DNA of 53,033 nt from Girardia tigrina (lineage: Eukaryota), in the NCBI GenBank assembly GCA_001938485.1, contig MQRK01239354.1, positions 1 through 53,033 on the forward strand, read 5' to 3'. The notes below the pieces were generated by a model. It worked only from the letters and a program-made list of their open reading frames with translations. It had not been told where the DNA came from and ran no database searches. This document shows, one piece after another, positions 21,828 through 52,037 of the stretch. A program made the position numbers and the translations under genes. Positions within the stretch are counted from its first letter, which is position 1, and each line of letters starts with the position of its first letter.

Positions 21828-23935
21828 ATCATCGTTTTTTGTTCACCTGCACTTGTGATGTGAACTCCCTCTGATAGTCCCTCTTTCATTGCTATCTTTA
21901 CTGCGAAGTTGAATACCAGATTGAATAGGTGAGGTCTACCCACACTGACTTATCTCACTTCTTTTTCCATCGTGAATTTCCTTTGGTTAATATGAATTAA
22001 CCTATGAATTCTTCTTATAAACTTGTGATCAACTGGGATTTGTGCCCCAGAATTTCGATTCTTCGAAGACAGTCCCTAAGAACTTGTCTTTGGATAGTGT
22101 CAAAAGCATTTTCGAGGTTAATAAATATTGCAAAAAATTTCTTTTTTCCAGTGTATGGTTTCTTCTCGAATCCTTCGCTTGATTGAAATCGTTGGAGATG
22201 TTCCTCACTTTGGTCTCAACTCAAACTCTGCCAGTATCGATTCGAGATGTGGAATTAGTCGGTTTGATATACCTCATGCCATAATTTTCCTCCAACACAC
22301 AAGAGGAAGATTCCTCGGTATTTTTTTTGGAATAGTTTTGAATAGTATTACTACCTTCAGGGTTTTCCATCCGTCCGATAAATCTTCCATTCCCTCCCAT
22401 GCCTGCTTAAAACAGTGTAAAAACTTGAAAAGAAACTAGTGTCGATTCTTTAATAGTTCGATATCATGCCATTTGAACCAGTAGCTGTATTATTCTTGAG
22501 ATGCCTTACAGAAGCTTTCACTTCTTCCAATTTCGGAAATTTATTAATGTCCAGAGTTATGTCGTTATTATACATGATCTCATAGTTCTTTTCTTCTTTT
22601 TTGAATAATTTTGGGAAGTGTTCCGCCTACTCTTCATTAGTAAGCTTGTTCTATACTGATCAGAGTGTTGATTCCTTTGTTTTGCTATTGCACAGTGTTA
22701 AGAGCTCGGCGTATAACTCGGAGAATTTTTCAAAACAATCTCTGATCAATACTCCATTGACTTTTGTTCCGATCTACTCTAATCTATCTGTCTCCCACTT
22801 CCGACGATTTCTTAAGATGTTTAATCTTGCTACTTTTACTTTATCTGCTGATTTCTATTTTGGAAGTATTTTTTTCTTATTGACCATTTTTCCTGAAGTA
22901 GCTATTTAAGCCCATCAAGTTGTGGATGTAACCATCTGTTCTTGAGCAAGACTGTTTTCTTACGTCTGTATCTTTGCATCCAGTTCTGCACTGTCACTTC
23001 AAGATCTCCTGAATTGTTAATTGTAAGACACGTAAATATTCTATCCACAAAGGTGTCAAAAATGATATCTATTGAACGTTTAGAACGCACCATACCTCTT
23101 TCTCATGCCACCCTATATATATATATATGGATAAAAATAAGACGACGCGTTTCGAGATAATAAAAATCCCATCATCAGGTCACAAATTACACTACGCAAG
23201 TACACTATATGGTAGCTTGCCGAAAATAAATTAAATTTATCCAATAAATTATTGGATGAAAATAACTTTATTTCACTTTTGCTTAAAATTAAGAAAAATG
23301 CACTAAATGCAATCAATCTCATTCTCGCAAACCAACCATTGGCAGNNNNNNNNNNNNNNNNNNNNNNNNNNNNNNNNNNNNNNNNNNNNNNNNNNNNNNN
23401 NNNNNNNNNNNNNNNNNNNNNNNNNNNNNNNNNNNNNNNNNNNNNNNNNNNNNNNNNNNNNNNNNNNNNNNNNNNNNNNNNNNNNNNNNNNNNNNNNNNN
23501 NNNNNNNNNNNNNNNNNNNNNNNNNNNNNNNNNNNNNNNNNNNNNNNNNNNNNNNNNNNNNNNNNNNNNNNNNNNNNNNNNNNNNNNNNNNNNNNNNNNN
23601 NNNNNNNNNNNNNNNNNNNNNNNNNNNNNNNNNNNNNNNNNNNNNNNNNNNNNNNNNNCACATTGCAAAGTAAAATCCATATAATAGGGATAAAAATAAG
23701 ACGACGCGTTTCGAGATAATAAAAATCCCATCATCAGGTCACAAATTACACTACGCAAGTACACTATATGGTAGCTTTTTCTTCGTTACCTTTTAAAGTA
23801 AATTATATTTATTAAAATTGTGAAAAATTGTAGTATTCAAACAATTCAATAGAAAATTGCTGATGATGATGTATATAAACATCGAAACATGTCCAATAGT
23901 TGTATAAAAAAAGCTTTAACCAAATTATATTTTCG

Positions 23936-23983
<48 letters not shown>

Positions 23984-26900
23984 CTTTGATTTAAATGTGC
24001 GTTGTTTAAACGTATCAGATCAGTTTTTTAATTTTTCGAATCTTCTGTTTAATTTCGTAATTAAACGTGACCAGTTTTGTAGCAAGATTTGACTAGTGTA
24101 AATCTAGTGAATGTAAATTGAAGTTTGTTTTTCTATGATTTGTATTTTTTCAGTTTAGTGTTTTTTGATGGCTAACAATCGTCCTATCTCTGCTTAATTC
24201 ATTAAACTTAAGCAGCCTTCTTCCAAATCTACTCAGGAGCAGCCAAATGAACAATTGACTCCCTCATCTCAATCGCCATCTACTCCTGAAATTGTGTTCC
24301 AAAATCATCAATCCTCGTCGTCTCCACCAATGAAGAAGCGAAAACTATTGTCTTTACTTCAAAACATACTATTTCAATCGCAACAATACGGAAGGCTTAG
24401 ATAGAACCTTCATAAATAAACATTTTCAGAATTTCGAGAAAAGCACTGATTGTCCAGCAAAGCAAAATAAGCTTCTGAAGCATGCGGATTCGGAAAGCCA
24501 CAGGAAATTAAAAGCTTTCTTTTCGACTAGAGAAGAAAGTCTCCGTCAAAGAACTTTGTTTAACCAATTACACATAACTAGTGATGCCGAGAAAAAAGAA
24601 AATATGCAACGGCTCATAAATTATGCTAAATCAATATGCTGGCTTACAAAAGAGGAAATTCCTTATTTAAAAGCAGTCTCCTGAATTCGTGCAAAGAATT
24701 GAATTGACGTTTTGGATGGGTTGGGAAAAGGGGATGTTCACTTCAATGATGTATTATGATTGTCCTTAGATGATGCCACCAACTTGGTTGGTAAGAAAAT
24801 GGCACGCAAGCTCTGGTGATTAAAAATCACACTAAAGAGACAGTCTATATTCATTATCGTAGCCATGCCTTACAATTAGTGTTCGTAAATGCCGTGCAAA
24901 AGTATCCGGAAATTAAAAGGATTTTCTCCACTCTAAACAGCCTGTTGCAGCACCTTTACAACAGTTTGAAAAACCTCAGAAAATTAAAAGCAATTTAAGA
25001 CTTGCTTGATTGACCAGATATGGATCTTCTCGGGTCTGACAACACAAGATGGACATCCCACAATCACTGCATTGCATAAACTATCAAATTTTTGGAATCA
25101 ATATTAGTCATTTTGCAAGAAATTTATGCAGATGGTGGAGACTTATCATCAGAAGCTGGTGATCTGCTGTTGACACTTCAGACATCAAAGGGGGATTACT
25201 CTATTCTTTGAATTGAAGCGTATTCTCCAACCTCTCTCCATTTTATCGAAGCAGATGCAGTCTCCAAATTCTACTCTTGTGAGAATGGATGAGTTCATAT
25301 CAACTGCCAAATGCACTTTGAATGAATTAATGGAGAATCATATCCTTTATCAAGATTAAGCACAGAACTTCATTCAATCAACATCAACAGCTCTTGTTAA
25401 CGAGATTATTTAGAAAACAGTTATTCTTATTCTCTTTTACCGGAACAGTTCGATTGTGGAAAGAACTCACTGAGCAATTTACTCATGATAATTTTAATTT
25501 TTGTTATCTCGATTTCCGATGATCCGCGTGCAGGGTCTGAAAGAAGCATTATCTTAATCACGCTAATAGTTTTTTAAAGCGTGATTCGAAAATCAAATGC
25601 AAATTAAATTAAGATCAAAAAAGATCAATAATTAAATTGATTAAAAATTTGGATATAAATACTTACTTACCGTTGACTTATAAGCCGTTGGCGTGTGTCT
25701 TGATAGTGGATGTTAATTTTTTTGTTTGATTTTTTTTAGAATTATCGTTAACTAGTTGTTAATATTTTTACTTTCTATAATTTATTTGTAGTAAAAATAG
25801 ACTCATTTTGTTGACTACTTGAGTCTATTTTTACAGCATGAATAGGATCCTCACGCATTTAAGGCAACGCATGTCCCATGAAAACTTTGAAGCATGTATG
25901 CTGGTTACGATTGAGGACCCAGAAAAGATGACAGATGAGGAAGCACTAAAAATTGGCACAAACAAAAAAAGAAGAATTCGCACTCCATTATTCCCTTGTC
26001 ATGATGCACATGATATTTTGAATCAGCTACACCATTATAGTTTTACTCTATTCTGATATTAATTAGTGTGTTTATTTCTTGCATTCTAGTAAAATGGTGT
26101 TTCCATTTCTTTTTGTGCTTTTCTGATGGTCATTTACTTTTTGGTCAATAACAGAATTATGAAGATACAGAAAAAAATTTTCCACGAGTAAAATAATTTC
26201 TTTCTTAATCAATTTGAAACACTTAATTTTTACTTTATGATAAATTACTAGAATATCACTTACTTCTTCATCAACATCCGCTCAGATTTAGAGTGGAAAA
26301 AAGTGCATGCACATCGCAGTTCCCCCAATATTTTCCTGTCCCCCCCAAAGAAAAGTTCTGGTGGGAACATTGGTATCCATGAAATTTAGAAACCTATTTC
26401 TAAAGGCTTTTTACCCAATCAATTTTCTTCAAACTTTGCACACTTACTAATTTTCGATGACAATAAATTATAATGTGAAAATGTGATCGAAAAAAACTTT
26501 TTAAGCTCCCAAATAAAGAGAAAAGGAAAACTCGTAGTTCCTGGACAAAATTAGTAAAAAAAAAATCTACTTATAAATTATAATTATATTAAATTATTAT
26601 TATAAATTATTATTATATTATATTACGTAAAAAAGTAAATATAAAAAAGTATTAATAAATTAATAAATATTAATAAATGTAATAGTAATTTTCCGTTCTA
26701 AAAAAGATAACAAAACAATTATCTTGGCGAAATAGAGTTTTGCTAGCATAAAGAATGGATATAAAACTTTTTTTGATTTACTAGTTATTTTCATATGAAC
26801 ACCTTGAGCGGTGATTTTTTATGAGATGTAATCGATCCGCTCAGTTTCTTTGCTTCTGTTAAATTATTCTATACGATAGAAATCATAGATTTTTGTTTTC

Positions 26901-27628
26901 TTTTTTTATTTTAAATTTGATACGTTATTATATTGCTTTATTAAAAGTACTTAAATAAAAAAAAGAAAAAAATGCAATGACATTTAATAAAATACATTAA
27001 AATAATTGTTGCTTTGTATTCTGATATTTTGAAAGATAAGTTTATTTTGTAACTTGTGTTTAATATATTTTCTTTAGATTCCCTGATTAAAAGATTAGAA
27101 TTCTTGAATCAAACGTCTCATTTATTCGAAGACCTTGCAAATTTAATTACTAAGTTTAATGAAGCCAGCAAGGAGACTGCTCTCATTCATAAAAGTAATT
27201 TTTATTGATTTTGATTGACTAAAAGTAGGGTATTGAAATTTAACAGAAAATTTGACTGGGTTTCTTTTTGTTATTATACAAATTAAAACACATCATGCAT
27301 AAATTTCATGACAATATAATGAAATTTAAATATTAAATAAAAACCAGATAGTAATTTGGGTTGCCGGACAATTCAACACATATTGTTTTATTCCACACAA
27401 TGAAATGAGATATTTTCATTGTAACTATACATTTTTTAAAACTCAACATTTTTAATAACTATATTTTTAATGTGATTTTAGATTTTTTAATATTTTTGAA
27501 AAAATCAACGTTTGACATGTTTCGATCACGATCTCTGACCGTCTTCAACAACTTTATTTGTGATATATCCTTATTGTATGTATTTTAATAATTTATTTGA
27601 TTTTTAAAGCATAAATAAATAAAGCGTA

Positions 27629-27664
<36 letters not shown>

Positions 27665-30600
27665 TACGAAAAGACCAGTCATGTATGACGGGGGAGTTAA
27701 ACCTTAACCCTAACACTAACCCTTACCCTAAGTATTAAAGTATTAAAGTACTAATTACCCAATAATACTTTAATAAATAATAATATTTAATTCTGAATAT
27801 TCCTTTTAAAGTTAATAAACCTTTTAAAATTATATTATTAAAAAAATTAATATTCATATACTAAATTTCCGAAAATTGCTGATGATGATGTATATAAAAC
27901 ATCGAAACATGTTCAATAATTATATAAAAAAACTTTAATCAAATTATATTTTCAAAATATTAAACTTATATATATATTTAAATTAATTTAATTTATTTAA
28001 AGATAATATTGAGGTTGCTTTACTTTTTCAATTTCGGATATTGATCGATGGGTTATAGTGTCTTATTAGTAATTATTCATAATACAACCTCTCATAATGT
28101 GAATCAAAATTCTTCTGAAGAATAGAAAATTTATCTTTAGAAATAGATGAAATTCTTTCGTTGTAACATCTGCGTGAGGAATATTTTAAATTGTTTGAAT
28201 GTGTAAATGTATTTATGCTGTATGTTGATTTAAGTATGTTGAATTTAGAATTGTGATTCTCCTACCCAGATGGAAATTGGTATTTTTTTATTTAATTTAA
28301 AGTGATTGATTATTTGAACATAATTAAAATATAAATATTTTAAAAAATGATTTAGAAAAATTGTTTGAATAATCATGAATAAAAATAGAAATAAGTAAAC
28401 CAAATAGAATGATGACAGACAATGAAAGACTTTCTGAGAGTCATAAAGACTCTAAATGTAATTGTAATAAAAATTCAAACGAGACTTGTCTAAATGTTCT
28501 TAATATGGCGACACACGACTCTGTGACACCAATTATCAAGGGACCAGAGACATTCGTTGGGTCAGAAGCAAAATTAGAAGAATTCCTAATAAGCTTTGAG
28601 AGATATTCAAAGATTCTTTGATTTAAGGAAGAAAGAAAAGCAATATTAGTTACAGCATTCATGACCCTAGAAGCGATAAACAAATATGAGAAAACACAAG
28701 GAGGTAGTTGGGTAACAAGAATGAGAAGTGCATTCTCGAAAGAGAAAAATATTTTGGAAATAATGAAGGAGCTTATTTATTAGAATCGGGGATAAAAATC
28801 CATCAGAAGTATTTAAAAAGATTGATGAACTAATGGAGAAACTATTTGAGAAAAAAATAGGAAAAAAAGAACTTTCAGATCTAGCATACGCCAACGCCAT
28901 CGAAGATAGAGAAGTAAGAAGAAAAATGTATCTGAGAAATATCACAAAAGCAGAAGATATAAAGAATATCCAGGAGAAAGTTTACGAATTTGAGATGAAA
29001 GACTAGAATATAAGAGTGGACGCGTACACGACGAAGCAAAATAAAGAATGGAAGAAAGTATAATATAGAACAAGAAGACCGAGACCAAGATACGAGGAGA
29101 GAATGATCGAAGAACCAAGAAGAAATTTTAAAGCGAGAATGATCATACATCGGACCTGCCATGAAGAAGGACATGTGAGACGGGAATGCCCAACCATTGT
29201 AATGCAACCATCGTAATAAGAAAGGACATGTAAGAACACAATGTTATGATAATCCGAACAGATTTAGAGAGCACGAACAATCTGGAAGAGAAGATACAAG
29301 GAATAGATGATATGACCGAAAAGAATACACAAACACACATTACAGAGGTCGGATGGGATATACGAATAGAAGAGACCAAGTAGCAGAATTAGAATACTTC
29401 GATGACGACTGGGAAAGAATGTCGGAAAGATCGATTCTCCCACCTAGATGGAAATTGGTATTTTTTTTATTTAATTTTAAAATGATTGACTATTCGAACA
29501 TAATTAAAATAATCATTTTATAAGCTCATATTTTTAATTTAACAATTAAAATTAAGTTTAATATTTTTTGGTAAAATTTAAATAAAATGCATTTTTAATA
29601 ATTTTTAATAAGAAATTTAAAAAATAATGGCAAAATTTTATAATTAAGAACGCCATTAAAATCAAATTTTATTGCAATATATTTTATTGCAATATATATC
29701 CACCGAAATATATTGCAATAAAATTTGATTTTAATGGCGTTCTTAATTTTAATAATTTGATGACATTTTTATTATTTGTGGATTTATTGAGAAATGTTAA
29801 AAATTATTATTTTTAATTAATATTTTTTAGAAGTTAAATATTTTAAAAAATGACTTAGAAAAATTGTTCGAATAATCATGAATCAAAATACAAATAAAAA
29901 ACTAATTAGAATGATGACAGACGATGAAAGACTTTCTGAGAGTCATAATGACTCTAAATGTGTTAGTAATAAAAATTCAAACGAGACTTGTCTAATAATC
30001 TGCATTAATCAAGAACCTTACTTGATATACTTGACTGTTAGTGTTTACTAATACGTGTTTTGAAATAACGATTTTGCTCTCCAATGTGGGCCTCCCATAT
30101 TTTTCAAATTGTATTGAGCCTGATAGTCGTTGGGCGGATTATTATGTTGGGGGAAACGTTTAATATTACCTTAGCAACTTCAAAACAACTCCGATAAGTC
30201 TCACAATCATCGTAAAGATTCAAAATCAATTGTGCCGTCCTCTGAGATCGACTCAAATCCGCATATAATTCATCAATGTCGATATTTTCTTTAATTTCAA
30301 AATTTATCGATAAATCCTTCATTTTTCCCATCACATCCGCGGTACATTGCCCACTTTCCCAATTACTGTCCAAATATCTTTTAAAAATTTCATTATTAGT
30401 TTTCATCATTTATCAGTTGTCACTCTTCAACCAAAGTTACAGAAAAATAGTCAAAAACGCAATTAAAATCCGATACAAAGCTTTAAATTAAAAAACAATT
30501 AATGGTGTCTTCTCCAAATCAAAACGAAAGATTTTCGCGCCAGAAAAAAATTATGAATTCATTAAAACAACACAAATTCATTAGCATAAAAATTCTTTTT

Positions 30601-33600: not shown

Positions 33601-36600
33601 GTTATTGTTTCGCAAGCTGATAACTTTATTTACATTTCATATCATTCGTTTCTATTGTAAATCTACTTTTAAAAAGTAATTTATTTATTTCAGAAATGGC
33701 CGAGGTATTTGATAATATCGCTGTCAAAGAGCCACAAGCAAACGCAAGTGAAGCATTTATGATATTTGCTAAAGGACAACGATGTATGCAGAAATATTTG
33801 GATTTTGCATTCGATGAAATAAATAAAGTTTGATATTAAAGGCAGTTTACAAAAATTATTCACATATTTAAAAAGATAGTTGAAAATCTCAAAATATTCT
33901 TGAAAAAGGTAATTCCTGACACAAGACTCACTATAAAGAAGTATCTAAATGCAAAATTCGAATATTTGGTAAATCTTTTTTTTAATTTAAATACAGTCAT
34001 TTTGATAAGTTTGAAAATCAAATTTTCAAATAAAAATTTTTTAAACTCGTTATATAAAATTTTTTATATTCGTTATTGCAATATCCAAACGTTTTTGTTT
34101 CATTAGACGATTTTCGCATTTAATAAAGAAATTTTAATTTTTTTTATTCGAGTTTCCGGCAATTTATATAGATTAGACACTAAACACCATTAATTAACAG
34201 TTAGAAGCCACTTAAATCAATAAATCTTTACCTAAATTTTTGCATTTTTGGCCATTAATATTTTTTCATAAATTCTACTTTTACCAATTCACAATTCATT
34301 TAATATTTTTATAAATTTGTATAAATCTTTTAAAATGGGTCATGATAATGTAAACAATTATGACAATATTTCCAAAAGCATAATTAAATGCAAAAACAAA
34401 ATTAGGAAATTGACTTATTTCAATTTACATGTTTAAAATAAAATTATTCTAGTCGTACTGCCTTAAAGTAAAAGAAATGGATGATGAAGAATCTTGTTAC
34501 GTTGCAATGCATGAAACTCTGTACAGAATTGAAACCGGAAATTATGAATATCGGTATATTTTATATTAAATATCTTTAATTAAAGTAGAGATGATTAATA
34601 CTCATTTTTATTTTTATTTTAAAATTTATTGTTCAAATGTTATTGTATTAGGGGTACCCAAATGTTATGTCGATTTTTATTGATTTTTAGAAACAAAAAT
34701 AAAACCATATAAAACATTTATTTAATCAGAAAAATAGTCCCCATCGCAATCGATGACCTTTTCCCAACGTGATATAAGTTTTTCTATGCCATTAGAAAAA
34801 AAGGATTCGTCCTTGGATTCGAAAAACTTCACCAGTCCATTTTGGACATCATCCATTGATAGGAATTTGTTACCCTGAAGATAATGTTGCAAAGATCTAA
34901 AGAGATGGTAATCCGAAGGGGCCAAGTCAGGAGAGTATGCCGGATGAGGTAGAACTTCCCATCCCAATTCTTTCAATTTTTGCTGTGTNNNNNNNNNNNN
35001 NNNNNNNNNNNNNNNNNNNNNNNNNNNNNNNNNNNNNNNNNNNNNNNNNNNNNNNNNNNNNNNNNNNNNNNNNNNNNNNNNNNNNNNNNNNNNNNNNNNN
35101 NNNNNNNNNNNNNNNNNNNNNNNNNNNNNNNNNNNNNNNNNNNNNNNNNNNNNNNNNNNNNNNNNNNNNNNNNNNNNNNNNNNNNNNNNNNNNNNNNNNN
35201 NNNNNNNNNNNNNNNNNNNNNNNNNNNNNNNNNNNNNNNNNNNNNNNNNNNNNNNNNNNNNNNNNNNNNNNNNNNNNNNNNNNNNNNNNNNNNNNNNNNN
35301 NNNNNNNNNNNNNNNNNNNNNNNNNNNNNNNNNNNNNNNNNNNNNNNNNNNNNNNNNNNNNNNNNNNNNNNNNNNNNNNNNNNNNNNNNNNNNNNNNNNN
35401 NNNNNNNNNNNNNNNNNNNNNNNNNNNNNNNNNNNNNNNNNNNNNNNNNNNNNNNNNNNNNNNNNNNNNNNNNNNNNNNNNNNNNNNNNNNNNNNNNNNN
35501 NNNNNNNNNNNNNNNNNNNNNNNNNNNNNNNNNNNNNNNNNNNNNNNNNNNNNNNNNNNNNNNNNNNNNNNNNNNNNNNNNNNNNNNNNNNNNNNNNNNN
35601 NNNNNNNNNNNNNNNNNNNNNNNNNNNNNNNNNNNNNNNNNNNNNNNNNNNNNNNNNNNNNNNNNNNNNNNNNNNNNNNNNNNNNNNCTAACTGAAATTA
35701 ATAAATAAAAATGGTAGAGTCAAAATAATGTAGGCGGCAGTTAAACGATTTAGAAAAATATATCAAAAAAAACGACATAACATTTGGGTACCCCTAATAC
35801 ATAAAAAGTAATAATAACGACTCTTTGATCTTGTATTTAAATGAATTTCTGATTTTACATTCAATGAATTTAAACAAATGAATTATATTTCATCCTAATT
35901 CATATCACACACCCCCTTGTCATAAGGGCACACAGATATGCCGAGTCTGAAAAAAACAGGGATTATGTCTCAATTCTGATTCCTCAAACCGCTTTTGTTG
36001 TTGAACCGTTCTGATGGATCTGTTTCCCTCAGATTGGATCTACTGTGGTTCACAGGTTCATTATTCTCAGTTTTATCTTCATCGTCTCGTTCACAATGCA
36101 CTGTTCTCTCTGTCTCGGTTGCTTCATTCTCACCAACTTTTATTTTGGGATCCACTGTTGTTGACGAATTCAACCGGCAAATGTGACTAACATGATACTG
36201 TGTTCCGTCCACTTCGACTTGCTGTGACGATAACATCTCTGGTACCTATAAGCAACATCACAATTTGAGTGTGAACATTTATTAACAACACAAACAGATT
36301 ATTTACAACTATTATCAGTGAGCTTCTTTCTTTGATTGATATAGTTTTGGTTTATGTATTCCAATCTAAAAATCAATTAATGGGAATATTTTAATATTAA
36401 CTTTTAATTTTTCAAAATTTTATTGGATAAAAATGCATTAAGTAATTTTTAAAATAAACATTAGTTTTTTTTAAAATATATATTATAATATAATATATCG
36501 TTTATTAATATCATTTATTAAAAATATTATTAAAATTTATAATTATAAAACTTTTAATTAATTAGTATTTAAAAATTTATCTCATTAAATTAATTTCATT

Positions 36601-43340: not shown

Positions 43341-43799
43341 ATTTATTTTAATAATATTATATAACTTTTAAATTATAAAAATGTGCAATGAATTCTTTAA
43401 ACATTTAATATTTTATAAATAAATAATTTTCAGTAAGTAATAAATACTCTAAAATATGAGCCTCCTTATTTATTCAATGTAGTTAAACACTCTTAAATTT
43501 TTGTGATATTTGTTATGTAATCACATAATTCAGTTTTTTATCAATTAAGTTGCAAGAAATTTTCATTTAGTTAATTAAGACATCTAAATTTTAAATTTAA
43601 TTTTAAAAATATTTATTTAATGCCAATCGTTTCAAAATAAAGTTTTCTTTCTAAAAAACATTACAATATTGAATTGATCATTTTCAAAATATATTCCGTT
43701 ATATTTAATAATTATTTATCGTTATCATTTGTTTTAATAATTAATAATTTATTATGCTAACTTGAATTATCATATCTATCGATATATTTATATGTATAT

Positions 43800-46700
43800 A
43801 TGGAAACGGATAACATGTCATTAAATGATTTAAAACTTTTGGACCATGGAGGTCAAAGCAGAATCTTTTTTGGTCGAATGAATAGTATACATTTTGATGA
43901 AGAAAAAGAAGTTGTAGCTAAAGAAATTAATGATGCAAATGAATTGTTAATTGATAGAGAAGTTGAATGAAAAATTTATTTTAAACCAACTTAACAAAAC
44001 GATTTAGTTACGAATCAAAAGCTTACAACATCCTAACATCGTTCAAGTTTATGGTTACGTTGAATCTCCGAAACGTTTTATTCTTTTCGAATACATCAAA
44101 GACGGAGATTTAGAGAAATGTATAAATGATAATTATGAATTGTTAAAAGAAAACGTCTTGACGAAAATAAAAGGATTAATTGAAGGTACGTTTCCATGGT
44201 GACTGGGAAATTTGCTTTTAATGGAGTGTTCTAGGTATCAATTTTGTGCATAACTCAGGCATTCTTCATTTAGATCTTCATCCGAGAAATGGTAATGTTT
44301 ATAGCAAATAATGTGACTTATTTTAATCCATTAAGTACTCGTTTCTTGCAACCATCCCAGTCCGATCTTGAAAGTTAAATTTTACTAATGAGAAATATTT
44401 ATATTATTTAATTTTGATGCTAGATTTGTGATTTTGGATTGTCGGAAGTTGAGCAACCCGATACAGTTTTCGATTCCGTTGTTGGACGTCCCGGTTATGT
44501 TTCTCCTGAGGTTTTTTCTTTAATTATTCACTGGTTCTCGTTTAAATATGTCATTTAGTAACTCTTATTAGAGTTCTATATGAAAGTTAATATGTTAAAA
44601 TGAATTTAAAATCGACTAACCATTCAGAATGGATTTTATATGCATTTAAATAGATCCTTAATCATTAATATGTCTACATCCGTTTTCTTTTTATAGGGCG
44701 TTGTGCCGAGGGCTTCAATGTTTTTCCCTTTCCCGAAAATCCAGGAAATTGCGGGAATGGGGATAAAAATTTTACAATTTTGTATTCCCGGGAATGGGAT
44801 TGGAAATTTGAGATTGATTTTGAATAGATTATAAATGACACCTTATCCTTTTTTACACACCTTGATATTGCCGCACGAATTCTTTTTTAACGTTTTTTTT
44901 TATTTTACGCGATTTCAGTATAAAAAAATTTTTTAAATCAGCTTTAAGCAGTGATTGTGTCATCAATGGATTGTTGTGTCATCTAAACACGCTCAATAGG
45001 GTTTTTTGAAAGACCCATTTGCACATTAATCTTAGGCTCTAAAGATCTGATATAAAGTGCTTCACAGTCCACCCTCTCCCAATAATTCTTAAACCGAGAA
45101 CACAGAATTTTAAAGTTATTTATGTTTATATTTTCGTTTGAATTACAACCCTTTCTGTGCTCTGCTATATTACTCCCACCTACATTCCGACCGTGTTCTT
45201 GAATTCTCCTACATAGATGACGGGACGTCTCTCCAATGTATGTGGCATTACACCCATAACATGTAAATTTTTATACGAGATCCTTCATAAAGATTTATTG
45301 GGACGAAAATTGTACATACAGCTGCGCATTACAGAATATATTGTTCAAAATAAGAGACCGTTAGTGCATCAACCAACACAAGATAATACAAACTGTGAGA
45401 TATTATGATGAAATTGCGAAAATATTATAAATATAATTTATTAATAAGAAATTTAAAAAATAATGGCAAAATTTTATAATCCAGAACGCCATTAAACTCA
45501 AATTTTATTGTCGCAATATATTTCGGTGGATTTTCCACCATCTTCAGGCTGAATTAACATCAATTTTGTTGTCTTATATATAGCAAATTGATGATTATGC
45601 AAACATCTTGCCTAATAACTAATTAAATATTTTCAACAAATTGGATGAGAGACTTGTTTGTACATTAATGGACGGATTAAGTGATTTAATCAATAATGCC
45701 TCACAAGTAACTCTTTCCCAATAATTTTTAAAATGACTACACAATATTTTAAAATTAGTTGTTTTCACCTCCGACTTACAACCCTTCATGTATCCAGCAA
45801 TATTACTCCCATTACCCAATCGTCCATGCTCCTGAATCCGTTTACAGAGATGACGAGACGTCTCTCCAATGTATGTAGCGTTGCACCCATTACACNNNNN
45901 NNNNNNNNNNNNNNNNNNNNNNNNNNNNNNNNNNNNNNNNNNNNNNNNNNNNNNNNNNNNNNNNNNNNNNNNNNNNNNNNNNNNNNNNNNNNNNNNNNNN
46001 NNNNNNNNNNNNATTGATTTTAAAATAGACGATTTAAATTTTTTGTAACCTTCTGAATAAGGAACGATTAGCGTATATCCAATATTAGAATTTTCATTAG
46101 ATAATTTATCGGGTTTTAATTCGCCTTTACCCTCATATTCTTTATTCATTAATTTATCTATCGTCTCATTAGTTAGTTTCTCTAAAAAGGATTTTGAATA
46201 TCCATTTTTCAGCAATAGTTCTGTTAGTTTATCTATGCTTGCATCTGCCTTTTCATATGTCGATGATAGAGACCAACACCTAAATAACAGACCCTTTATC
46301 ATACTTCTATTATACTTAGGTTCACAGAAGCTTTTAGTAGTAGTATATAACCCTGTATCTGTTTTCTTTCTATAAATCTGTCTCGTAACGACTCCCTTTT
46401 CTCTCAATTAATAAATCTAAAAATGGTAAAACACCATTCTTCTCAAGCTCAACCGTGAAAACAATATTAGAATGAAGGGAATCCATTAATGTCCAAACAA
46501 GTCTCTCTTCCAATTTGTTGAAAATATTTAATTAGTTATTACGCAAGATGTTTGCATAATCATCATTTCGCTACATATAAGACAGCGAAATTGTTGTTAA
46601 TTCAGCCTGAAGATGGTGGAAAATCCACCGAAATATATATTGCGACAATAAAATTTGAGTTTAATGGCGTTCTGGATTAAATAATTTATTGTATATTTTT

Positions 46701-49700
46701 TTAATATTCAGATATTATTGTATTTGTATTTGAATTTAATAAAGCATATTGTTGCAGTTTTATTTATCTTAGTATAACAAGCTATCGCCGCATTGGAGAA
46801 AATGGAGAATTTAAAAATTACCGAGGTGGTGACAAAATTCTGTGGACAAGAAGATGTCGAAAACTGGATTGATCGGTTAGAAACAGCCTCAAGAATATTC
46901 GAGAGTGAGTCGAAATGAGCCTCACTCATTCCGCCGTTCCTGACCAGTGACGCATATTCTACCTGGAAGCTACTCGATGAAAGCGCAAAACAAGATCTTG
47001 GCATAATAAAAGGCGCCCTGAGGAGAGTATATGGCAAGTCAAAAGCACAAGCATGGATGGAGTTGAAGAACCTGTCGTTATTGCGGGGTGAGTCACCGGA
47101 TGTACTTGCAGAAAAAATATCCACGCTGTTGGCGGTGGCCTGTGGAGGAAAGGCGGTGCCAGAGGAGGCAATTTCCTTGTTTTTTCTTGACTCTATTCCC
47201 GTAAATGGGAGAAATCAAGTGCTGGTGCTTCACGGTGAAGATATGATAAAAAATAAGATAATAAAAGCGTATTGTCCCAAGCAAACGGGTCGCCACAATA
47301 TATCATGGCAGAAGTTGAAACAGAATTAGGCAACAGATCAAACATGGCGAGAACCCCAGTGATACGGTGCTATATCTGCAAAAAATTGGGCCATAATCGA
47401 AGTAAGTGTCCAGTAAAGTGCTTCAACTGTGGGAAAAATGGTCATCGTAAGTCTGAATGGTCTAGTCTTTCGGGAAACGGGAAGACGGAGGTTGTGAATT
47501 CGCAGAATTAGATGGCAGTTTCCGTGCGGCTTCTGTGATGTTGACTTCAGTCTTAATTTCTAATATTAGAAGAGTAACGATGATTGATACCGGCTGCAGC
47601 ATATCTCTAATGGCGCAGCATTGTGTGGTCGGATTAATGGTGAAAAAAGAGTTAGTTAAATTTAGACTGATCAATGGTGACGCAGTACACAGTGACAGTT
47701 ATGTGAGTCTGGTACATGTAGTTTGTGAGGGGGTGGCTGCAGATGAGTAATCTAAAAGTATTTATAATGAATGTGCTTCCATTGGGGGTTGAAATGATTC
47801 TAGGACTTGATGTTATAGCCAAACGAAAGATGCTCGGGATAAACCCTGATATAACGTTAAAAGTGGTCTCGACTGACAAATCCTGCGGAGTTATAAAAGA
47901 AACAAGCAATGGTCAGAAGAGGGAATCTATAGTTATCGATGATATCGACTTTCTCGTGGAGTGGAATTGTGCCAAGTGGAAAGTCAAGTGGAAATGGAAC
48001 CCTGATAGTGGTGGGGCAAAAGAGTGTCTGGCACCCCGACAATTCGTGAACGATGGAGATAAAGAAGAATTCGACATGGAAATTAAATCATGAAGATGTG
48101 CTAGTCGACTATGACGAAATCAAACACGGCCCAATCAGACTCCAATGTGATCTGCGATTTCATCAATTGAATGTCTGCCACCTTTAAAAAGAGCAAGAAT
48201 AGCAGTCTATTGGGACTCTGTAGTATCTTTCTTCTTTCCAATTTCAGAAACAAGTAAATAAACGAAATATGATTATGTTTCTTAGGATTAATATGAAAAT
48301 GACCTGTTTCACACCCAGTAACAGGTTATTTCCATGTGACAATAGCTTAAAGCATACTTTTATAAAACTAAGTTCATAATCTTTTTTGAAATTAATTGTA
48401 AAATGAAATTTATATTGAAAAAATAATTTATAATTGAATGTTTTAAAAAATTAAAGTAGGAATAAAAATTATTTACTAATTTAATTTTAACAGTAGATTT
48501 TCCATTCAAATATTTTTAAATATCGAAAATCATATTTAAGTTAATAAACTTTGTAAAAATAAAAAAAACAAAATATGATTTATACAAAACTTAATAACAT
48601 AACATTTACATATATCGATATTTATATTTAGAACTTTAAAATCTGGTTTATGCAAACTGAAATATTGTTTCTCATAAATTTTTTTGTATAATGAAAGTTG
48701 AAATGGAAATAAAATTTAATCATGAACATTGATCTTAATCACAAAACCAATACCAGTCATATTTTCAAAGTTTTTAAATATTCAGTTTATTATATTTTAC
48801 ACGTTACAACATTAAAACAAACGTCAAAAATGGTTGACCAAATAATTCGGTACCGATTTCTGAATTGGATAGCCTGGTCTTTGGAGGCCTGTTTCCGAAC
48901 TTTAAACTACCGAAAAAGTTGTTAACACGAGAAAATTATAGAAAAGATTGAAATACCCCGAGTCGAGAAAACCAATGTTATTTTAATTCTTCATGACAGA
49001 CATAACAAAATAAAATATAATTTTTAAGGAATCCAAAATGTATTTATTAAGAAAAGATACCAAAAAATCATGAAGTTATGACAATTAATAAATAACTAAA
49101 TAATAAATAAAAAACTAATAATAAATAAATAAATACAAATTTGAATTAAATTGTTTTCTATTTAATTTATAAATATCTATAATTAGGGGTAATCACAAAT
49201 TTAATTTAATTAATCATTCAGATAATAAATTTTTTAATTGATTTATGTATTGTCATCGATATCACAATTTTGGGCAGAATTTCAGCTCAATCGAATTACG
49301 GTAAGTGGGGGAAAAATCGATTGCAAAATGAGGAAAAAATCGTGGACAAACCAAAATGAAAGCAAGTTAATAAAAACGTGTTTGGAAGTTTAAATAACTC
49401 AATAAATGTTAAAATATTGATAAATTACATGTTATATTGTTTACCAATTTCGAACATTAATTAGTAGATCATAGCGTCTTATAACGAGTCTTTGGTTGAA
49501 GAATTGAAATGTCGTAAATTTTGAAAAACAGGTGCATACTAATTTATTAAAAATTAATAACGTAAATTCAATTTTTAAGCCCATAACATGACATCTATAG
49601 TTTATTTTTATTATTGGTTTTGTGTGGATCACAAAAGTTTTGGTATCAAAAAAATTATTCAAGAATTTTATAAAAACTAATAAAAAATTTAAACTTTAAT

Positions 49701-49768
49701 CTTTGCTCATTGATTATTTTATCCGTTATAAACTATAATATACATTGATCTATAAAAACATTTAACGT

Positions 49769-49803
<35 letters not shown>

Positions 49804-52037
49804 AAAAGAGTTTGTCGTTCTTAAAATTCCTGCAGTTGCAGCCTTGTGCTGATTCCACTGTTCAACTTTAAAGAGTGATGATTTAAATGGATAAAGCTGA
49901 AAACCACTATGGGTGCAAGTGCAAAGTTTCCATCAGCCATCCAGGTCTTCGGAATAGTGACATCGGGATTAAATATCCGAGATTAAGTACCTCAAGAATA
50001 AGTGTCGTGGATTCATATATATAAAACTGGATTGATCGGTTAGAAACAGCCTCAAGAATATTCGGGAGTGAGTCGAAATTAGCCTCACTCATTCCGCTGT
50101 TCCTGACCAGTGACGCATATTCTACCTGGAAAAATAAAGTAAAATGTATATAATAGGGATAAAAATAAGATGACGCGTTTCGAGATAACAATAATTTTGT
50201 GACCTGATGATGGGATTATTATTATCTCGAAACGCGTCGTTTTATTTTTATCCCTATTATATATATATAAAGGTTTAAAATAAGACGACAAGTTTCGAGA
50301 AAACCATATCATCATCCGGTCAATCCACACCATGTACTAATCTAGTACACTATACGAAAACATACAATAATTAAAAGATATTTAATCAATAAATTATTGG
50401 ATTAAAATAAATTTATTTCATTTTTCTAAAACAAATAAGCAAAATACACTAAACACGATCAATTCCATTCTCGTAAACCAACCATTGGCAACTATCAATT
50501 CCCATTTGAGAAAACGATATGTTTACAATCCACTCAATTTTAGCCTTCACATCAAACCCAAAACAATCCGAAATCGCATTGATGTTTTTGACTGAAATGT
50601 CTGACAAAATGGAAATCTGAGAGAACAGTGTGTTTTCTCAACTGTATCAGGTTTGAAACTGGTGACATTCAGTTTAATAATAAATTCGGTCAATGCAAGA
50701 CAATCAAATACTGGCAAAATACATTTCGTTTTGAATTTCTTCGTTCTTTCCAATTGTCTTGCACTAATCAAATGGGTTATCATCGATTTTATTGGTGAGA
50801 AAGTACAATATTTTGACTTCTATGTTAAAGTGTCATTGAATCATTCAAATCGTTTCTATAAATGCACTGAGTTGAATAGTGTATGTGTTAAAAAATATGA
50901 TTTTGATATTTGTATATTCATTAAATAAAAGTTTTTATCAATAATATTCTTAATAATAGTTTTTTAGTAAATTACATATTAAATAAAATTTAGATCATCC
51001 TGTTGAAAGTATAAGATTTTCTGATGATCATCAATATCGAAGATTTTAAGAGATGTATAATGATTTTCTAATACCAAAGATTGAAATCTATTCTCACTAA
51101 ACAACTGAATAGATTAGTCTAATTGACAGAGAAGTTCAATTGTAAAATGGCAACTATTTACCGACACAATACTATCGGATTGATGAAATAGTCATGAATA
51201 AGAGATCAATAATAGGGGAAAGAAAAAAGAAAAACAAATAAATAAACAAAACCAATAACTGTTAATCAATTTTGAAAATAGAGGAAAACTACATTATTTT
51301 ACTCTTGAAATTTGTCACTAAAAGCAACAAAAAAGGATGTGTTAGAAAAAGAAAATTGAAGTTTAATGCATTTTAGTTAGCTCATGAACTGCAACAGGGA
51401 ATATTCTGGCGGAGTTAAACGATGGCATTTAAATTTACATATCGAAAATACTATATAATAGATGATAAGTATATTGAATAGATCATCTTCAATTATCAAA
51501 ATACAACGCTGATCAATAACGTAAAAACTATTTAAAATAATACTTTTATATATTTTTGGAATTAATAAATTTTGATTCATAGATGTCGAAATAACTGTGG
51601 CGTTCTTTGATTTTTATTTCGATAATGGCATTAGAAAGTTGATACAGAGATGGGAAAAGTGTGTGAAACTGAATGGTGATTATATTGAAAAGTTTGATAG
51701 TGATTCTGATGAGGATTGATCAATTTTGTTAACTGGAATAAACTTTTACTTATCAGTCCACGAACTTTTGGGATACTCCTCGTATTAAATCATAAGAAAT
51801 GTTGTGTATCATATGATAAGTAACATTTTCAAACATCATTTGACTCTAATATGTTCTAATCTATTTTACATTGTAATTTTCATCTTTTAATTATTTTAGA
51901 AAGTTAGACAAGAAAGGAAAACAAAAGACTCGGATATTTGGTCATTGGGCTGCATATTTTGGAAAATATTCACTAAAAATGAAGCATATGATTTTGATAA
52001 TAACAATGCAATGTATTATAAAATTGGACAAAATTTG
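43800..52037 (+). CDS. Divergent protein kinase (TKL/MAP3K-like, non-RD); exons 43800-43961, 44008-44185, 44235-44291, 44336-44373, 44424-44510, 51900-52037; 3' end not found
   Basis: In-phase GT-AG joins give LDHGGQSRIF, VVAK, IDRE, LQHPNIVQVYG, FEYIKDGDL, GINFVHNSGILHLDLHPRNVLV, LKICDFGLS, GRPGYVSPE|KVRQERKTKDSDIWSLGCIFW. Confidence 0.88.
45010..45270 (-). mobile_element. Penelope-like element GIY-YIG endonuclease fragment
   Basis: CNATYIGETSRHLCRRIQEH...NFKILC..YWERVDCEALYIRSLEPKIN; paralogous to the adjacent PLE. Confidence 0.85.
45513..45549 (-). ncRNA. Minimal hammerhead ribozyme, family C (PLE 3' pLTR)
   Basis: GC-CUGAAGA-U-GGUGG(AAAAU)CCACC-GAAAU-AU-AUU-GC. Confidence 0.8.
46605..46643 (+). 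ncRNA. Minimal hammerhead ribozyme, family C (inverted pLTR copy)
   Basis: GC-CUGAAGA-U-GGUGG..CCACC-GAAAUAUAUAUU-GC. Confidence 0.8.
46790..48150 (+). mobile_element. Gypsy-like gag-protease region, frameshifted
   Basis: KFCGQEDVENWIDRLE; two CCHC knuckles (CYICKKLGHNRSKC, CFNCGKNGHRKSEW); protease MIDTGCSISL, ILGLDVI. Confidence 0.88.
50201..50241 (+). ncRNA. Minimal hammerhead ribozyme, family A copy 3
   Basis: GAC-CUGAUGA-U-GGGAU..AUCUC-GAAAC-GC-GUC-GUU, inside an inverted repeat at ~50149-50261. Confidence 0.85.
50284..50321 (-). ncRNA. Degenerate family-A-related hammerhead
   Basis: GAC-CGGAUGA..UCUC-GAAAC-UU-GUC-GUC, with a core U>G change. Downstream flank is homologous to 23220-23345. 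Confidence 0.55.
51590..51785 (+). mobile_element. mariner 3' end fragment
   Basis: FYFDNGIRKLIQRWEKCVKLNGDYIEK followed by TIR-like ACTTTTGGGATACTCCTCG-TA. Confidence 0.8.

What the first reader, a model, noticed from the sequence alone, without database searches (positions are those of the whole stretch)
23114..50340. Dense population of minimal hammerhead ribozymes from at least four families
Seen: nine CUGANGA...GAAA motifs with stem II and mostly palindromic stem III (ACGCGU, ACAUGU, AUAUAU). Families: A (23141-, 23700-, 50201+, degenerate 50284-), B (23856+, 27875+), C (45513-, 46605+) and degenerate E (27510-). Stems differ between families while the core is conserved, which resembles covariation. 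Known: Penelope-like elements and non-LTR retrozymes carry such minimal type I hammerheads, which cleave as dimers. Inference: the genome hosts several ribozyme-bearing retroelement lineages, most without visible coding capacity here.
Basis: partly seen in the sequence, partly recalled or inferred. Interest (0 to 1): 0.8.

Follow-up and report, generated by a model that had tools for sequence, protein, structure and literature searches.

The report
Penelope-like retroelement minimal hammerhead motifs
The window holds seven well-formed minimal hammerhead ribozyme motifs in three families that sit in broken tail ends of Penelope-like retrotransposons, a well-described arrangement in invertebrate genomes, so the finding is real but ordinary.

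Summary
Seven of the nine reported motifs are complete minimal type I hammerheads. They form three families: A at 23141-23181(-), 23700-23740(-) and 50201-50241(+); B at 23856-23897(+) and 27875-27917(+); C at 45513-45549(-) and 46605-46643(+). A strict descriptor finds these 7 and nothing else, against 0 hits in 300 simulated windows. The eighth motif (50279-50326, -) is a decayed copy of A. The ninth ('E', 27507-27556) scores at noise level. All seven show the published marks of Penelope-like-element (PLE) min-hammerheads: an unpaired base after A9, a G-C pair closing helix II, a palindrome in place of helix III, and a non-G cleavage base. Helices co-vary between families and in two metagenomic relatives. 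Family C lies 71 nt beyond the stop of a 5'-truncated PLE reading frame (reverse-transcriptase tail, linker, GIY-YIG endonuclease), with an inverted truncated copy upstream. That is the textbook PLE insertion shape. Families A and B have no adjacent coding sequence. Rfam's hammerhead models do not detect any of them. Cleavage activity is inferred only. Verdict: known kind, new instances, low interest.

The parts
23141..23181 (-). Hammerhead A1: helix I 3 bp, CUGAUGA, unpaired U, helix II GGGAU/AUCUC with a 7-nt loop, GAAA, palindrome ACGCGU, C17 at 23144
   Evidence: 59.6 bits
23111..23345 (-). Family A unit carrying A1. Its 3' end abuts (TA)n at 23111-23130 and its 5' side runs into the N gap. 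No coding similarity.
23700..23740 (-). Hammerhead A2, identical to A1, C17 at 23703
23659..23777 (-). 5'-truncated family A copy carrying A2 plus a tail. It lies upstream (minus sense) of the A1 unit, giving a partial tandem across the N gap.
   Evidence: (D5, 99%)
50201..50241 (+). Hammerhead A, third intact copy. It differs from A1 by a loop II change and a G-C to G-U change in helix I. C17 at 50238.
   Evidence: 58 bits
50136..50195 (-). Inverted half copy of A (3' strand of helix II, GAAA, palindrome, tail). It forms a hairpin-like junction with the + copy.
   Evidence: (I7)
50252..50490 (-). Decayed family A unit. Its hammerhead relic is at 50279-50326, with a mutated core box and a lost palindrome. 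The motif is no better conserved than the flanks (76% in both).
   Evidence: (26.8 bits)
23856..23897 (+). Hammerhead B1: helix I AUUG/CAAU, CUGAUGA, unpaired U, helix II GAUGU/ACAUC, GAAA, palindrome ACAUGU, C17 at 23893
23789..23983 (+). Family B unit 1, about 200 nt, non-coding, ending in (TA)n
27875..27917 (+). Hammerhead B2. Same as B1 apart from one extra loop base and U17 (at 27913).
27802..28000 (+). Family B unit 2, 78% identical to unit 1. The hammerhead is 41/43 identical against 80/112 in the flanks.
45513..45549 (-). Hammerhead C1: CUGAAGA, unpaired U, helix II GGUGG(A)/(U)CCACC, GAAA, palindrome AUAUAU, U17 at 45515. It lies 71 nt after the stop of the PLE frame.
46605..46643 (+). 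Hammerhead C2, in the inverted upstream copy. Palindrome lengthened to AUAUAUAU, U17 at 46641.
45622..46531 (-). PLE reading-frame remnant covering the reverse-transcriptase C-terminal part, the linker and the GIY-YIG endonuclease with C..C..H..H. It aligns to residues 528-810 of an 810-aa RT+GIY-YIG relative. It is 5'-truncated, has one frameshift, and contains one N gap.
45438..45621 (-). 3' untranslated tail of the C element, which contains C1
   Evidence: I1, I3, D9
46482..46705 (+). Inverted 5'-truncated copy of the C tail, placed at the 5' side of the truncated frame (arms 94% and 87% complementary)
   Evidence: I1, I3
29602..29777 (.). Third family C remnant: an inverted pair of tail fragments. 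The right arm keeps only the 3' half of the hammerhead. It is nested in a repeat of another element.
   Evidence: (D9, D14, I4)
44992..45348 (-). Second PLE endonuclease remnant. A 95-codon open piece holds the GIY-YIG core. It is 5'-truncated and interrupted upstream. No hammerhead is detectable downstream.
27992..30133 (-). Third PLE endonuclease remnant. It is split by one nested insertion of about 1.77 kb and carries at least two in-frame stops.
4484..4700 (-). Weak fourth PLE endonuclease-like remnant (E 1e-4, at least one frameshift)
27507..27556 (-). Not supported as a hammerhead: it shares only a GAAACAUGUC decamer with B.
   Evidence: 13.6 bits, E 0.27

Best explanation
The motifs are minimal type I hammerhead ribozymes of the kind carried in the terminal repeats (pLTRs) of Penelope-like retroelements.

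Each copy sits in the 3'-terminal few hundred bases of an element copy that was 5'-truncated on insertion. That is why most have no coding sequence next to them. Helix III is replaced by a 6-8 nt palindrome, so a single motif cannot close its own helix III. Two motifs, in a more-than-unit-length transcript or on two transcripts, are expected to pair through the palindrome into a double hammerhead. Each would then cut after base 17 (C or U).

What is shown here: the motif anatomy, its excess over chance, compensatory changes in the helices, physical linkage of family C to a PLE RT-linker-GIY-YIG frame, and the PLE-typical partial-tandem, inverted and (TA)n-flanked insertion shapes.

What is inferred: that the RNA is made, that it dimerises, and that it cleaves. 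Published work on PLE hammerheads reports weak or protein-assisted cleavage and no proven role in insertion. The likely role is therefore processing of tandem or read-through element transcripts. Most copies in this window are dead relics.
For: - Excess over chance. The strict descriptor finds 7 loci against 0 in 300 simulations. The relaxed descriptor finds 7 against 0.5.
- Published PLE min-hammerhead marks (PMC4209133). All seven copies have the unpaired base between A9 and 10.1, the G10.1-C11.1 pair, the palindromic 15.x-16.x segment and a non-G base 17.
- Covariation. On 9 sequences (7 from the window, 2 metagenomic), 97.7% of cells are paired and 9 of 11 pairs change on both sides. Slid controls give 25-48% paired.
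- Selection on the motif. The B1/B2 hammerhead is 41/43 identical while the flanks are 80/112 identical, Fisher p = 5e-4.
- Linkage to a PLE frame. The frame at 45622-46531(-) matches residues 528-810 of P0006, which has Pfam RVT_1 and GIY-YIG domains. It matches 126 of 126 related proteins. It ends 71 nt before C1.
- Relatives. L001 and L002 have a min-hammerhead about 76 and about 120 nt after the endonuclease stop, with compensatory helix II changes.
- Insertion shapes. The inverted 5'-truncated copy (I1/I3), the partial tandem A2-A1 (D5), the (TA)n flanks and the assembly gaps all match the published description of PLE insertions (PMC8557442).
Against: - No Rfam hammerhead model reports any of the sites, even at E up to 10 on 160-300 nt pieces.
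- The double-hammerhead fold is stable (-10.6 to -20.4 kcal/mol) but is never the predicted minimum-energy dimer (-16.8 to -28.8).
- Families A and B have no PLE coding sequence next to them in the sense orientation.
- The only same-strand pair close enough to act in cis (A2-A1) is separated by an unread gap.
- Published PLE min-hammerheads cleave poorly in vitro. In the one PLE studied biochemically, ribozyme mutants did not change insertion, and no natural RNA ends mapped to the cut site (PMC11167929).
- The cross-family covariation is partly built in, because the motifs were picked for having stems.
Confidence: 0.85

Rival explanations
1. Families A and B are not tails of coding PLEs. They are short non-coding hammerhead elements (retrozyme-like or SINE-like), copied in trans by PLE enzymes, possibly through small linear or circular RNAs.
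For: No coding similarity lies next to A or B. Both B units start at the same position and are about 200 nt long. A occurs as a same-strand partial tandem with nominal 559-nt spacing. The B hammerhead is much better conserved than its flanks. A 2026 preprint argues that animal retrozymes derive from PLE pLTRs.
Against: Only two or three copies of each family are visible. Extreme 5' truncation of ordinary PLEs gives the same picture (PMC8557442). Retrozymes carry canonical, not minimal, type I hammerheads and form arrays of 170-400 bp units (PMC7229834). The A spacing crosses an unread gap.
Confidence: 0.25
2. The motifs are homologous to PLE hammerheads but do not cleave in vivo. They persist as a structural or protein-binding part of the element's terminal repeat, or as passengers.
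For: Cleavage is weak in vitro. In the anole element cleavage is protein-assisted, insertion is unaffected by ribozyme mutants, and no RNA ends map to the cut site. Whole PLE clades thrive without the motif. The active dimer is not the predicted minimum-energy fold.
Against: The catalytic boxes are invariant across three otherwise unrelated families and two relatives, while the helices change by compensation. That pattern is expected for a working ribozyme fold rather than a simple binding site.
Confidence: 0.3
3. The motifs are chance matches of a short pattern in AT-rich, hairpin-rich repeats.
For: The bare CUGANGA...GAAA pattern has about 4 chance hits per window. The window is 29% G+C with many (TA)n runs.
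Against: The full descriptor gives 0 hits in 300 simulations. There are three independent families. The same motif follows the endonuclease stop in unrelated metagenomic contigs.
Confidence: 0.01
4. Family B belongs to a telomere-attaching, endonuclease-less PLE (Athena/Terminon type).
For: A degenerate C-rich telomere-like run (27698-27735) lies 66 nt upstream of unit B2 on the same strand. Telomeric PLE copies are reported as 5'-capped by telomeric repeats (PMC6431247).
Against: [quoted passage not shown] B1 has no telomere-like run. The locus is interstitial and full of other transposons.
Confidence: 0.04

Closest known systems
Minimal hammerheads of metazoan Penelope-like elements (Cervera & de la Pena 2014, PMC4209133)
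   Same: Conserved core boxes, an unpaired base between A9 and 10.1, a G10.1-C11.1 pair, a palindrome instead of helix III, a short and ill-defined helix I, several families per genome with compensatory changes, mostly solo or truncated copies, and pairs on opposite strands 100-700 bp apart. Family C is located beside a PLE frame.
   Different: Helix II here is 5-6 bp rather than the 7-8 bp reported for the main Schistosoma families. The family sequences are specific to this genome. Activity was not tested.
Poseidon element of the green anole (PAc; PMC11167929)
   Same: [quoted passage not shown]
   Different: In PAc the reading frame starts inside the hammerhead. Here the motif is 71 nt after the stop, and a conserved AATGGCG box follows the cut site. 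Whether that box is the start codon was not tested.
Non-LTR retrozymes of animals (PMC7229834; bioRxiv 10.64898/2026.07.22.740005)
   Same: Short AT-rich non-coding units with type I hammerheads, tandem copies, and a proposed dependence on PLE enzymes.
   Different: Retrozymes carry canonical hammerheads with loop-loop contacts and form multimeric arrays of 170-400 bp units. Here the hammerheads are minimal, and only one two-copy partial tandem is seen, across a gap.
Terminons / Athena telomeric PLEs (PMC6431247)
   Same: A minimal hammerhead at the element's 3' end.
   Different: They have no endonuclease, carry a telomere-complement run directly after the hammerhead, and sit at chromosome ends. 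None of this is seen here.

Membership tests
PLE minimal hammerhead (min-HHR) | Catalytic boxes CUGANGA and GAAA in order, with a non-G base 17 | tested here: met
   7 loci, with base 17 = C or U
PLE minimal hammerhead (min-HHR) | One unpaired nucleotide between A9 and 10.1 | tested here: met
   A U is present in all 7 window copies and in L001 and L002
PLE minimal hammerhead (min-HHR) | G10.1-C11.1 pair closing helix II | tested here: met
   G-C in 7 of 7 window copies, G-U in the two metagenomic relatives
PLE minimal hammerhead (min-HHR) | Palindromic 15.x-16.x segment in place of a closed helix III | tested here: met
   ACGCGU, ACAUGU, AUAUAU/AUAUAUAU
PLE minimal hammerhead (min-HHR) | Families within a genome related by compensatory helix changes | tested here: met
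   9 of 11 pairs change on both sides and 97.7% of cells are paired. Caveat: the motifs were picked for having stems, and there are few sequences.
PLE minimal hammerhead (min-HHR) | Location in the terminal repeat of a PLE, next to its RT-EN frame | tested here: inconclusive
   Met for C and for L001 and L002. Not shown for A and B, which have no adjacent coding sequence.
PLE minimal hammerhead (min-HHR) | Self-cleavage, as a dimer | not testable with these tools
   Only energies could be computed. The double hammerhead is stable but is not the minimum-energy fold.
Rfam hammerhead families (curated covariance models) | Score at or above the gathering threshold of any hammerhead model | tested here: not met
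   No hammerhead hit at gathering threshold or at E up to 10, on the whole window or on short pieces. These models expect a closed helix III.
Penelope-like element, canonical C-terminal EN+ type | Single frame with a reverse transcriptase followed by a GIY-YIG endonuclease | tested here: inconclusive
   The window holds only the last third (RT tail, linker, EN). The full-length relative P0006 has RVT_1 and GIY-YIG. Pfam on the window pieces alone gave only a weak match to a GIY-YIG-type restriction enzyme family.
Penelope-like element, canonical C-terminal EN+ type | CCHH motif with two cysteines between GIY and YIG | tested here: met
   C-x2-C directly before YIGETSRH...EH in both endonuclease pieces, by direct reading. 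The criterion is from PMC8557442.
Penelope-like element, canonical C-terminal EN+ type | 5' truncation, partial tandem (pLTR), inverted upstream copy, microsatellite flanks | tested here: met
.
Non-LTR retrozyme | Multimeric tandem arrays of 170-400 bp units | tested here: inconclusive
   Only A2-A1, two copies, with a nominal 559 nt spacing that spans an N gap
Non-LTR retrozyme | Canonical type I hammerhead with a closed helix III and loop 1-loop 2 contacts | tested here: not met
   The motifs are of the minimal type and get no Rfam Hammerhead hit
Telomeric EN-less PLE (Athena/Terminon) | [quoted passage not shown] | tested here: not met
   Absent downstream of all copies. There is only one upstream telomere-like run, near B2.

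The most novel reading that the evidence does not exclude
Families A and B may be a class of short, non-coding elements built around a minimal (dimer-only) hammerhead. They would be kept functional by selection on the ribozyme and copied in trans by PLE enzymes, making them a 'mini-retrozyme' with a PLE-type rather than a canonical hammerhead. The B hammerhead is an island of 95% identity in 71% flanks, and the two B units share a 5' end.
Probability: 0.2. Interest if true: 0.4.

Novelty: new member of a known kind. Interest (0 to 1): 0.15.

Why it matters
It matters little beyond annotation. The motifs mark PLE-derived sequence that protein-based repeat masking misses, because most copies have no coding part and Rfam's hammerhead models do not see them. 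The locus is a compact example of the published PLE insertion shapes: partial tandem, inverted truncated copy, (TA)n targets, and assembly gaps at the repeats. The biological role of PLE hammerheads is still open in the literature. Three families in one region, one of them visibly under constraint (B), would be useful material for a genome-wide covariation and RNA-end survey.

Tried and rejected
- **Rfam.** I searched at gathering threshold, and at E up to 10 on the whole window and on 160-300 nt pieces. There was no hammerhead hit, and the few hits (microRNA-like models) only reflect the inverted A junction.
- **Pfam on the window's ORF pieces.** There was no significant family, only a weak hit to a GIY-YIG-type restriction enzyme family. 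The PLE identity came from the word search and a full-length cluster member instead.
- **The look-up of encoding contigs.** As a result I could identify neither the source organism nor the genomic context of the protein relatives.
- **Big representative-protein search and structure prediction.** I did not use them, because the word search settled the protein's identity.
- **Thermodynamic folding of monomers and dimers.** It was uninformative. Helix II forms, but the double hammerhead is not the minimum-energy fold.
- **'Family E'.** Rejected.
- **Possible decayed motif after the second endonuclease remnant (about 44900-44945, minus strand).** It was seen by eye but was not detected by the model at E up to 10, so I did not count it.
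- **L003.** This more distant endonuclease relative has no hammerhead within about 550 nt downstream.
- **Cleavage-defined copy ends.** None of the copies' 5' ends falls exactly at the predicted cut site, so the insertion ends give no footprint of cleavage (reading).
- **B1 and B2 as the two pLTRs of one 4-kb PLE.** Rejected. The interval holds hAT-like fragments by eye, with no Pfam support, and no PLE similarity.
- **The 109-nt repeat 46860-46968 / 50023-50131.** It is a fragment of a gag gene of an LTR element, not part of family A.
- **Human origin.** Not considered likely, given 29% G+C and invertebrate-type transposons.
- My scripts printed coordinates of stop-free pieces and alignment bounds inside the PLE frame remnants. 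These implicitly bound the breaks. The covariance model R1 is a search profile, and no consensus line from it was printed or used.


Full report
**1. What the window is.**
The window is 53 kb at 29% G+C, with eight runs of N, and it is crowded with transposon remnants. Pfam confirms a piggyBac-type transposase piece, a pogo/Tigger-type DDE_1 piece, a mariner transposase, and the integrase and gag zinc knuckle of LTR retrotransposons. It also confirms one host-like PDZ exon. By eye there are also LINE reverse-transcriptase fragments at about 22000-23100(-) and hAT-like fragments at 24200-26050(+), but Pfam did not support these. The window does not look human. From my own knowledge, the composition and transposon mix would fit a cnidarian such as Hydra. 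That was not tested.

**2. The observation.**
The bare pattern CUGANGA-N(4-30)-GAAA has 12 hits against 3.9 expected. Seven of them are complete motifs. I wrote a descriptor after Cervera & de la Pena 2014 (PMC4209133). It requires:
- the core box, then 0-1 extra base;
- a helix II of at least 4 bp closed by G-C, with a loop of 3-12 nt;
- GAAA;
- a perfect palindrome of 4-8 nt starting at A15.1;
- a non-G base 17.

The descriptor finds exactly those seven loci, and none in 300 first-order Markov simulations of the window. A relaxed version also allows the U3-A8 core variant, any closing pair and a 3-bp helix II. It again finds only these seven, against a mean of 0.5.

The three families:

| Family | Copies | Helix I | Core | Helix II | Palindrome | Base 17 |
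|---|---|---|---|---|---|---|
| A | 23141-23181(-), 23700-23740(-), 50201-50241(+) | 3 bp | CUGAUGA, unpaired U | GGGAU/AUCUC | ACGCGU | C |
| B | 23856-23897(+), 27875-27917(+) | 4 bp | CUGAUGA, unpaired U | GAUGU/ACAUC | ACAUGU | C or U |
| C | 45513-45549(-), 46605-46643(+) | 2 bp next to the core; by direct reading, extendable by 7-8 pairs beyond a 6-nt bulge | CUGAAGA, unpaired U | GGUGG(A)/(U)CCACC | AUAUAU or AUAUAUAU | U |

I built a covariance model from the seven copies plus two relatives. The degenerate A lies in a unit 75% identical to the A1 unit over 243 nt, so it is a true decayed copy. 'E' has no flank similarity to anything and no core box, so I reject it.
- a half copy of A in inverted orientation (50136-50195);
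- an inverted pair of C tails, one with half a hammerhead (29602-29777);
- the coding remnants described in section 5.

**3. The gaps.**
- Gap 23346-23658 separates the body of the A1 unit from the tail of the upstream A2 copy. Both flanks are family A on the same strand (D5). The arrangement is therefore a partial tandem, but the 559-nt spacing is only nominal, and the gap could hide anything from a short spacer to a reading frame. The long 'ORFs' listed across it are runs of X.
- Gap 45896-46012 lies inside the PLE frame. The two flanks align to consecutive parts of one relative in a single frame (P0006 residues 569-810). Relatives have about 40 residues between the flanking motifs, close to the nominal 39 codons. 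This is consistent with one continuous frame but not provable, since the gap length is an estimate.
- Gap 34989-35687 has no motif near it.
- I filled no gap and used no relative's letters for that purpose.

**4. Marks of the known family.**
The 2014 paper lists features that were not in its search descriptor but recur in PLE min-hammerheads:
- the G10.1-C11.1 pair;
- palindromic 15.2-16.2 positions;
- families full of compensatory changes.

It also reports short helix I, mostly solo copies, and pairs on opposite strands about 100-700 bp apart. All seven copies have the extra U, the G-C closing pair and the palindrome. A2(-) and B1(+) are 122 nt apart on opposite strands. C1(-) and C2(+) are 1059 nt apart, counting the gap.

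**5. Link to Penelope-like elements.**
On the minus strand, directly upstream of C1, lies a reading-frame remnant (45622-46531). Pfam alone did not name its pieces. The word search with the 131-residue linker piece found five short relatives. One of their clusters contains an 810-residue protein, P0006, with Pfam RVT_1 (349-521) and GIY-YIG (713-796). tblastn places the window's remnant on P0006 residues 528-810.

The endonuclease pieces show C-x2-C directly before YIGETSRH...EH. This is the CCHH arrangement that distinguishes PLE endonucleases from homing endonucleases (PMC8557442). Its presence also argues against the 'Hydra' PLE clade, which lacks CCHH.

State of this gene: 5'-truncated, missing roughly the first two thirds including the RT catalytic core; one frameshift; one assembly gap. 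The stop codon is 71 nt upstream of C1. At the truncated 5' end sits an inverted copy of the element's own tail with hammerhead C2 (I1/I3, arms 94% and 87% complementary).

Three further endonuclease-proximal remnants exist, all on the minus strand:
- 44992-45348 has an open GIY-YIG core, is interrupted upstream, and has no detectable hammerhead downstream.
- 27992-30133 is split by one nested insertion of about 1.77 kb and has at least two in-frame stops.
- 4484-4700 is weak, with at least one frameshift.

No RT core is present anywhere in the window. Families A and B have no coding similarity beside them.

**6. Relatives elsewhere.**
- L001 is 62% identical to the query in the endonuclease. 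It has a min-hammerhead about 76 nt after the stop, with the family C palindrome and a helix II changed on both sides at two pairs.
- L002 is 45% identical. It has one about 120 nt after the stop, with the ACGCGU palindrome.
- L003 is more distant and has none.

On the 9-sequence alignment, 97.7% of pair cells are standard pairs, 9 of 11 pairs show changes on both sides, and sliding the partners gives 25-48%. Caveats: there are few sequences, the structure was derived from them, and the motifs were recognised partly by their stems.

Within families, every difference between intact copies falls into one of four classes:
- it lies in a loop;
- it keeps pairing (G-C to G-U);
- it keeps base 17 non-G;
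- it lengthens the palindrome by one TA.

B1 and B2 are 41/43 identical in the hammerhead but 80/112 in the flanks (Fisher p = 5e-4). This points to constraint on the motif in the source lineages. The decayed A copy is 76% identical both inside and outside the motif, as expected for neutral decay after insertion.

**7. Insertion shapes.**
The published description of PLE insertions includes heavy 5' truncation, partial tandems forming pLTRs, an inverted 5'-truncated copy at the 5' end, an optional 30-40 bp tail, a bias for microsatellites such as (TA)n, and resulting assembly problems (PMC8557442). This fits the locus:
- A2-A1 is a partial tandem.
- C has the inverted copy.
- The A cluster at 50136-50490 is an inverted half copy, a + copy, and a tail-to-tail decayed copy across a short (TA)n.
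- A and B units end in (TA)n (23111-23130, 23936-23980, 27967-27977, 50262-50270).
- Two of the three gaps named in the finding sit in these repeats.

**8. How it most likely works.**
Shown here: the anatomy, the linkage and the constraint.

Inferred: a transcript that carries two units, or two transcripts, pairs the palindromes into a 6-8 bp helix III and forms two composite active sites. Each cuts after base 17 and trims a more-than-unit or read-through RNA towards unit length.

The computed double-hammerhead structures are stable (-10.6 to -20.4 kcal/mol) but are not the minimum-energy dimers. This agrees with the weak in-vitro activity of PLE min-hammerheads and with protein-assisted cleavage in the anole element. 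In that element, ribozyme mutants did not alter insertion and no natural RNA ends were seen at the cut site (PMC11167929). Most copies in this window are solo relics that could not dimerise in cis.

**9. Comparison and verdict.**
This is the known PLE min-hammerhead in new sequence families. It is not a member of Rfam's curated hammerhead models, which were tested and not met. It is not a typical non-LTR retrozyme, because those carry canonical hammerheads in arrays. It is not a telomeric PLE, because no telomere-complement run follows the motif. Novelty: new member of a known kind. Interest: low.

Noticed in passing
27802-28000 (+) and 27992-28234 (-): Hammerhead B2 lies about 70 nt beyond the stop of a minus-strand PLE endonuclease remnant, but antisense to it. 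The two meet tail-to-tail across a short (TA)n at 27967-27977. The distance mirrors the 71 nt seen in the sense arrangement of family C. I have no explanation beyond two independent insertions into one microsatellite.
   Followed up: partly
27698-27735 (+): A degenerate C-rich telomere-like run (about five CCCTAA-like units) lies 66 nt upstream of unit B2 on the same strand. It is either an interstitial telomere-like sequence or the 5' cap of an old telomere-attached copy.
   Followed up: partly
28255-29995: Nested transposons. An element with 239-nt direct repeats (28255-28493, and 29433-29523 plus 29827-29995) around gag-like ORFs with a zinc knuckle sits inside the PLE endonuclease remnant. 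Its right repeat is itself interrupted by a 303-nt piece holding the inverted family C tail pair.
   Followed up: partly
45485-45491 (-), 46665-46671 (+), 29735-29741 (+); L001 about 2350; L002 about 963: A box AATGGCG (AATGGCC in L002) is conserved 5-31 nt 3' of the predicted cut site in all family C copies and both relatives. It may be the start codon of the element's frame inside the terminal repeat, as the frame start overlaps the hammerhead in the anole element.
   Followed up: no
46803-47330 (+) and 50023-50131 (+): A gag gene of an LTR retrotransposon carries at least one in-frame stop and is followed by a zinc knuckle (47272-47508) and a protease-like ORF. A 109-nt fragment of a second copy, 97% identical, abuts the family A cluster.
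   Followed up: partly
5472-5729 (+): A host-like exon encodes a PDZ domain (Pfam PDZ, E 7.7e-10). From memory it resembles the PICK1 PDZ, which I did not test. It is the only clear non-transposon coding piece I saw.
   Followed up: partly
50144-50266: The inverted family A junction folds as a long hairpin and draws sub-threshold matches to plant and animal microRNA precursor models in Rfam (best 43 bits against a gathering score of 113). This could become a false microRNA call in automated annotation.
   Followed up: yes
9449-10444 (+), 11606-13097 (-), 20556-21236 (-), 38203-38840 (-): Remnants of a piggyBac-type, a pogo/Tigger-type and a mariner transposase, and of an LTR-retrotransposon integrase (Pfam). 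All are fragmentary.
   Followed up: partly
6685-6766: A near-perfect 80-nt AT-rich hairpin draws sub-threshold microRNA-model matches (39 bits against a gathering score of 80). It is probably the terminal inverted repeat or hairpin of a small transposon.
   Followed up: no
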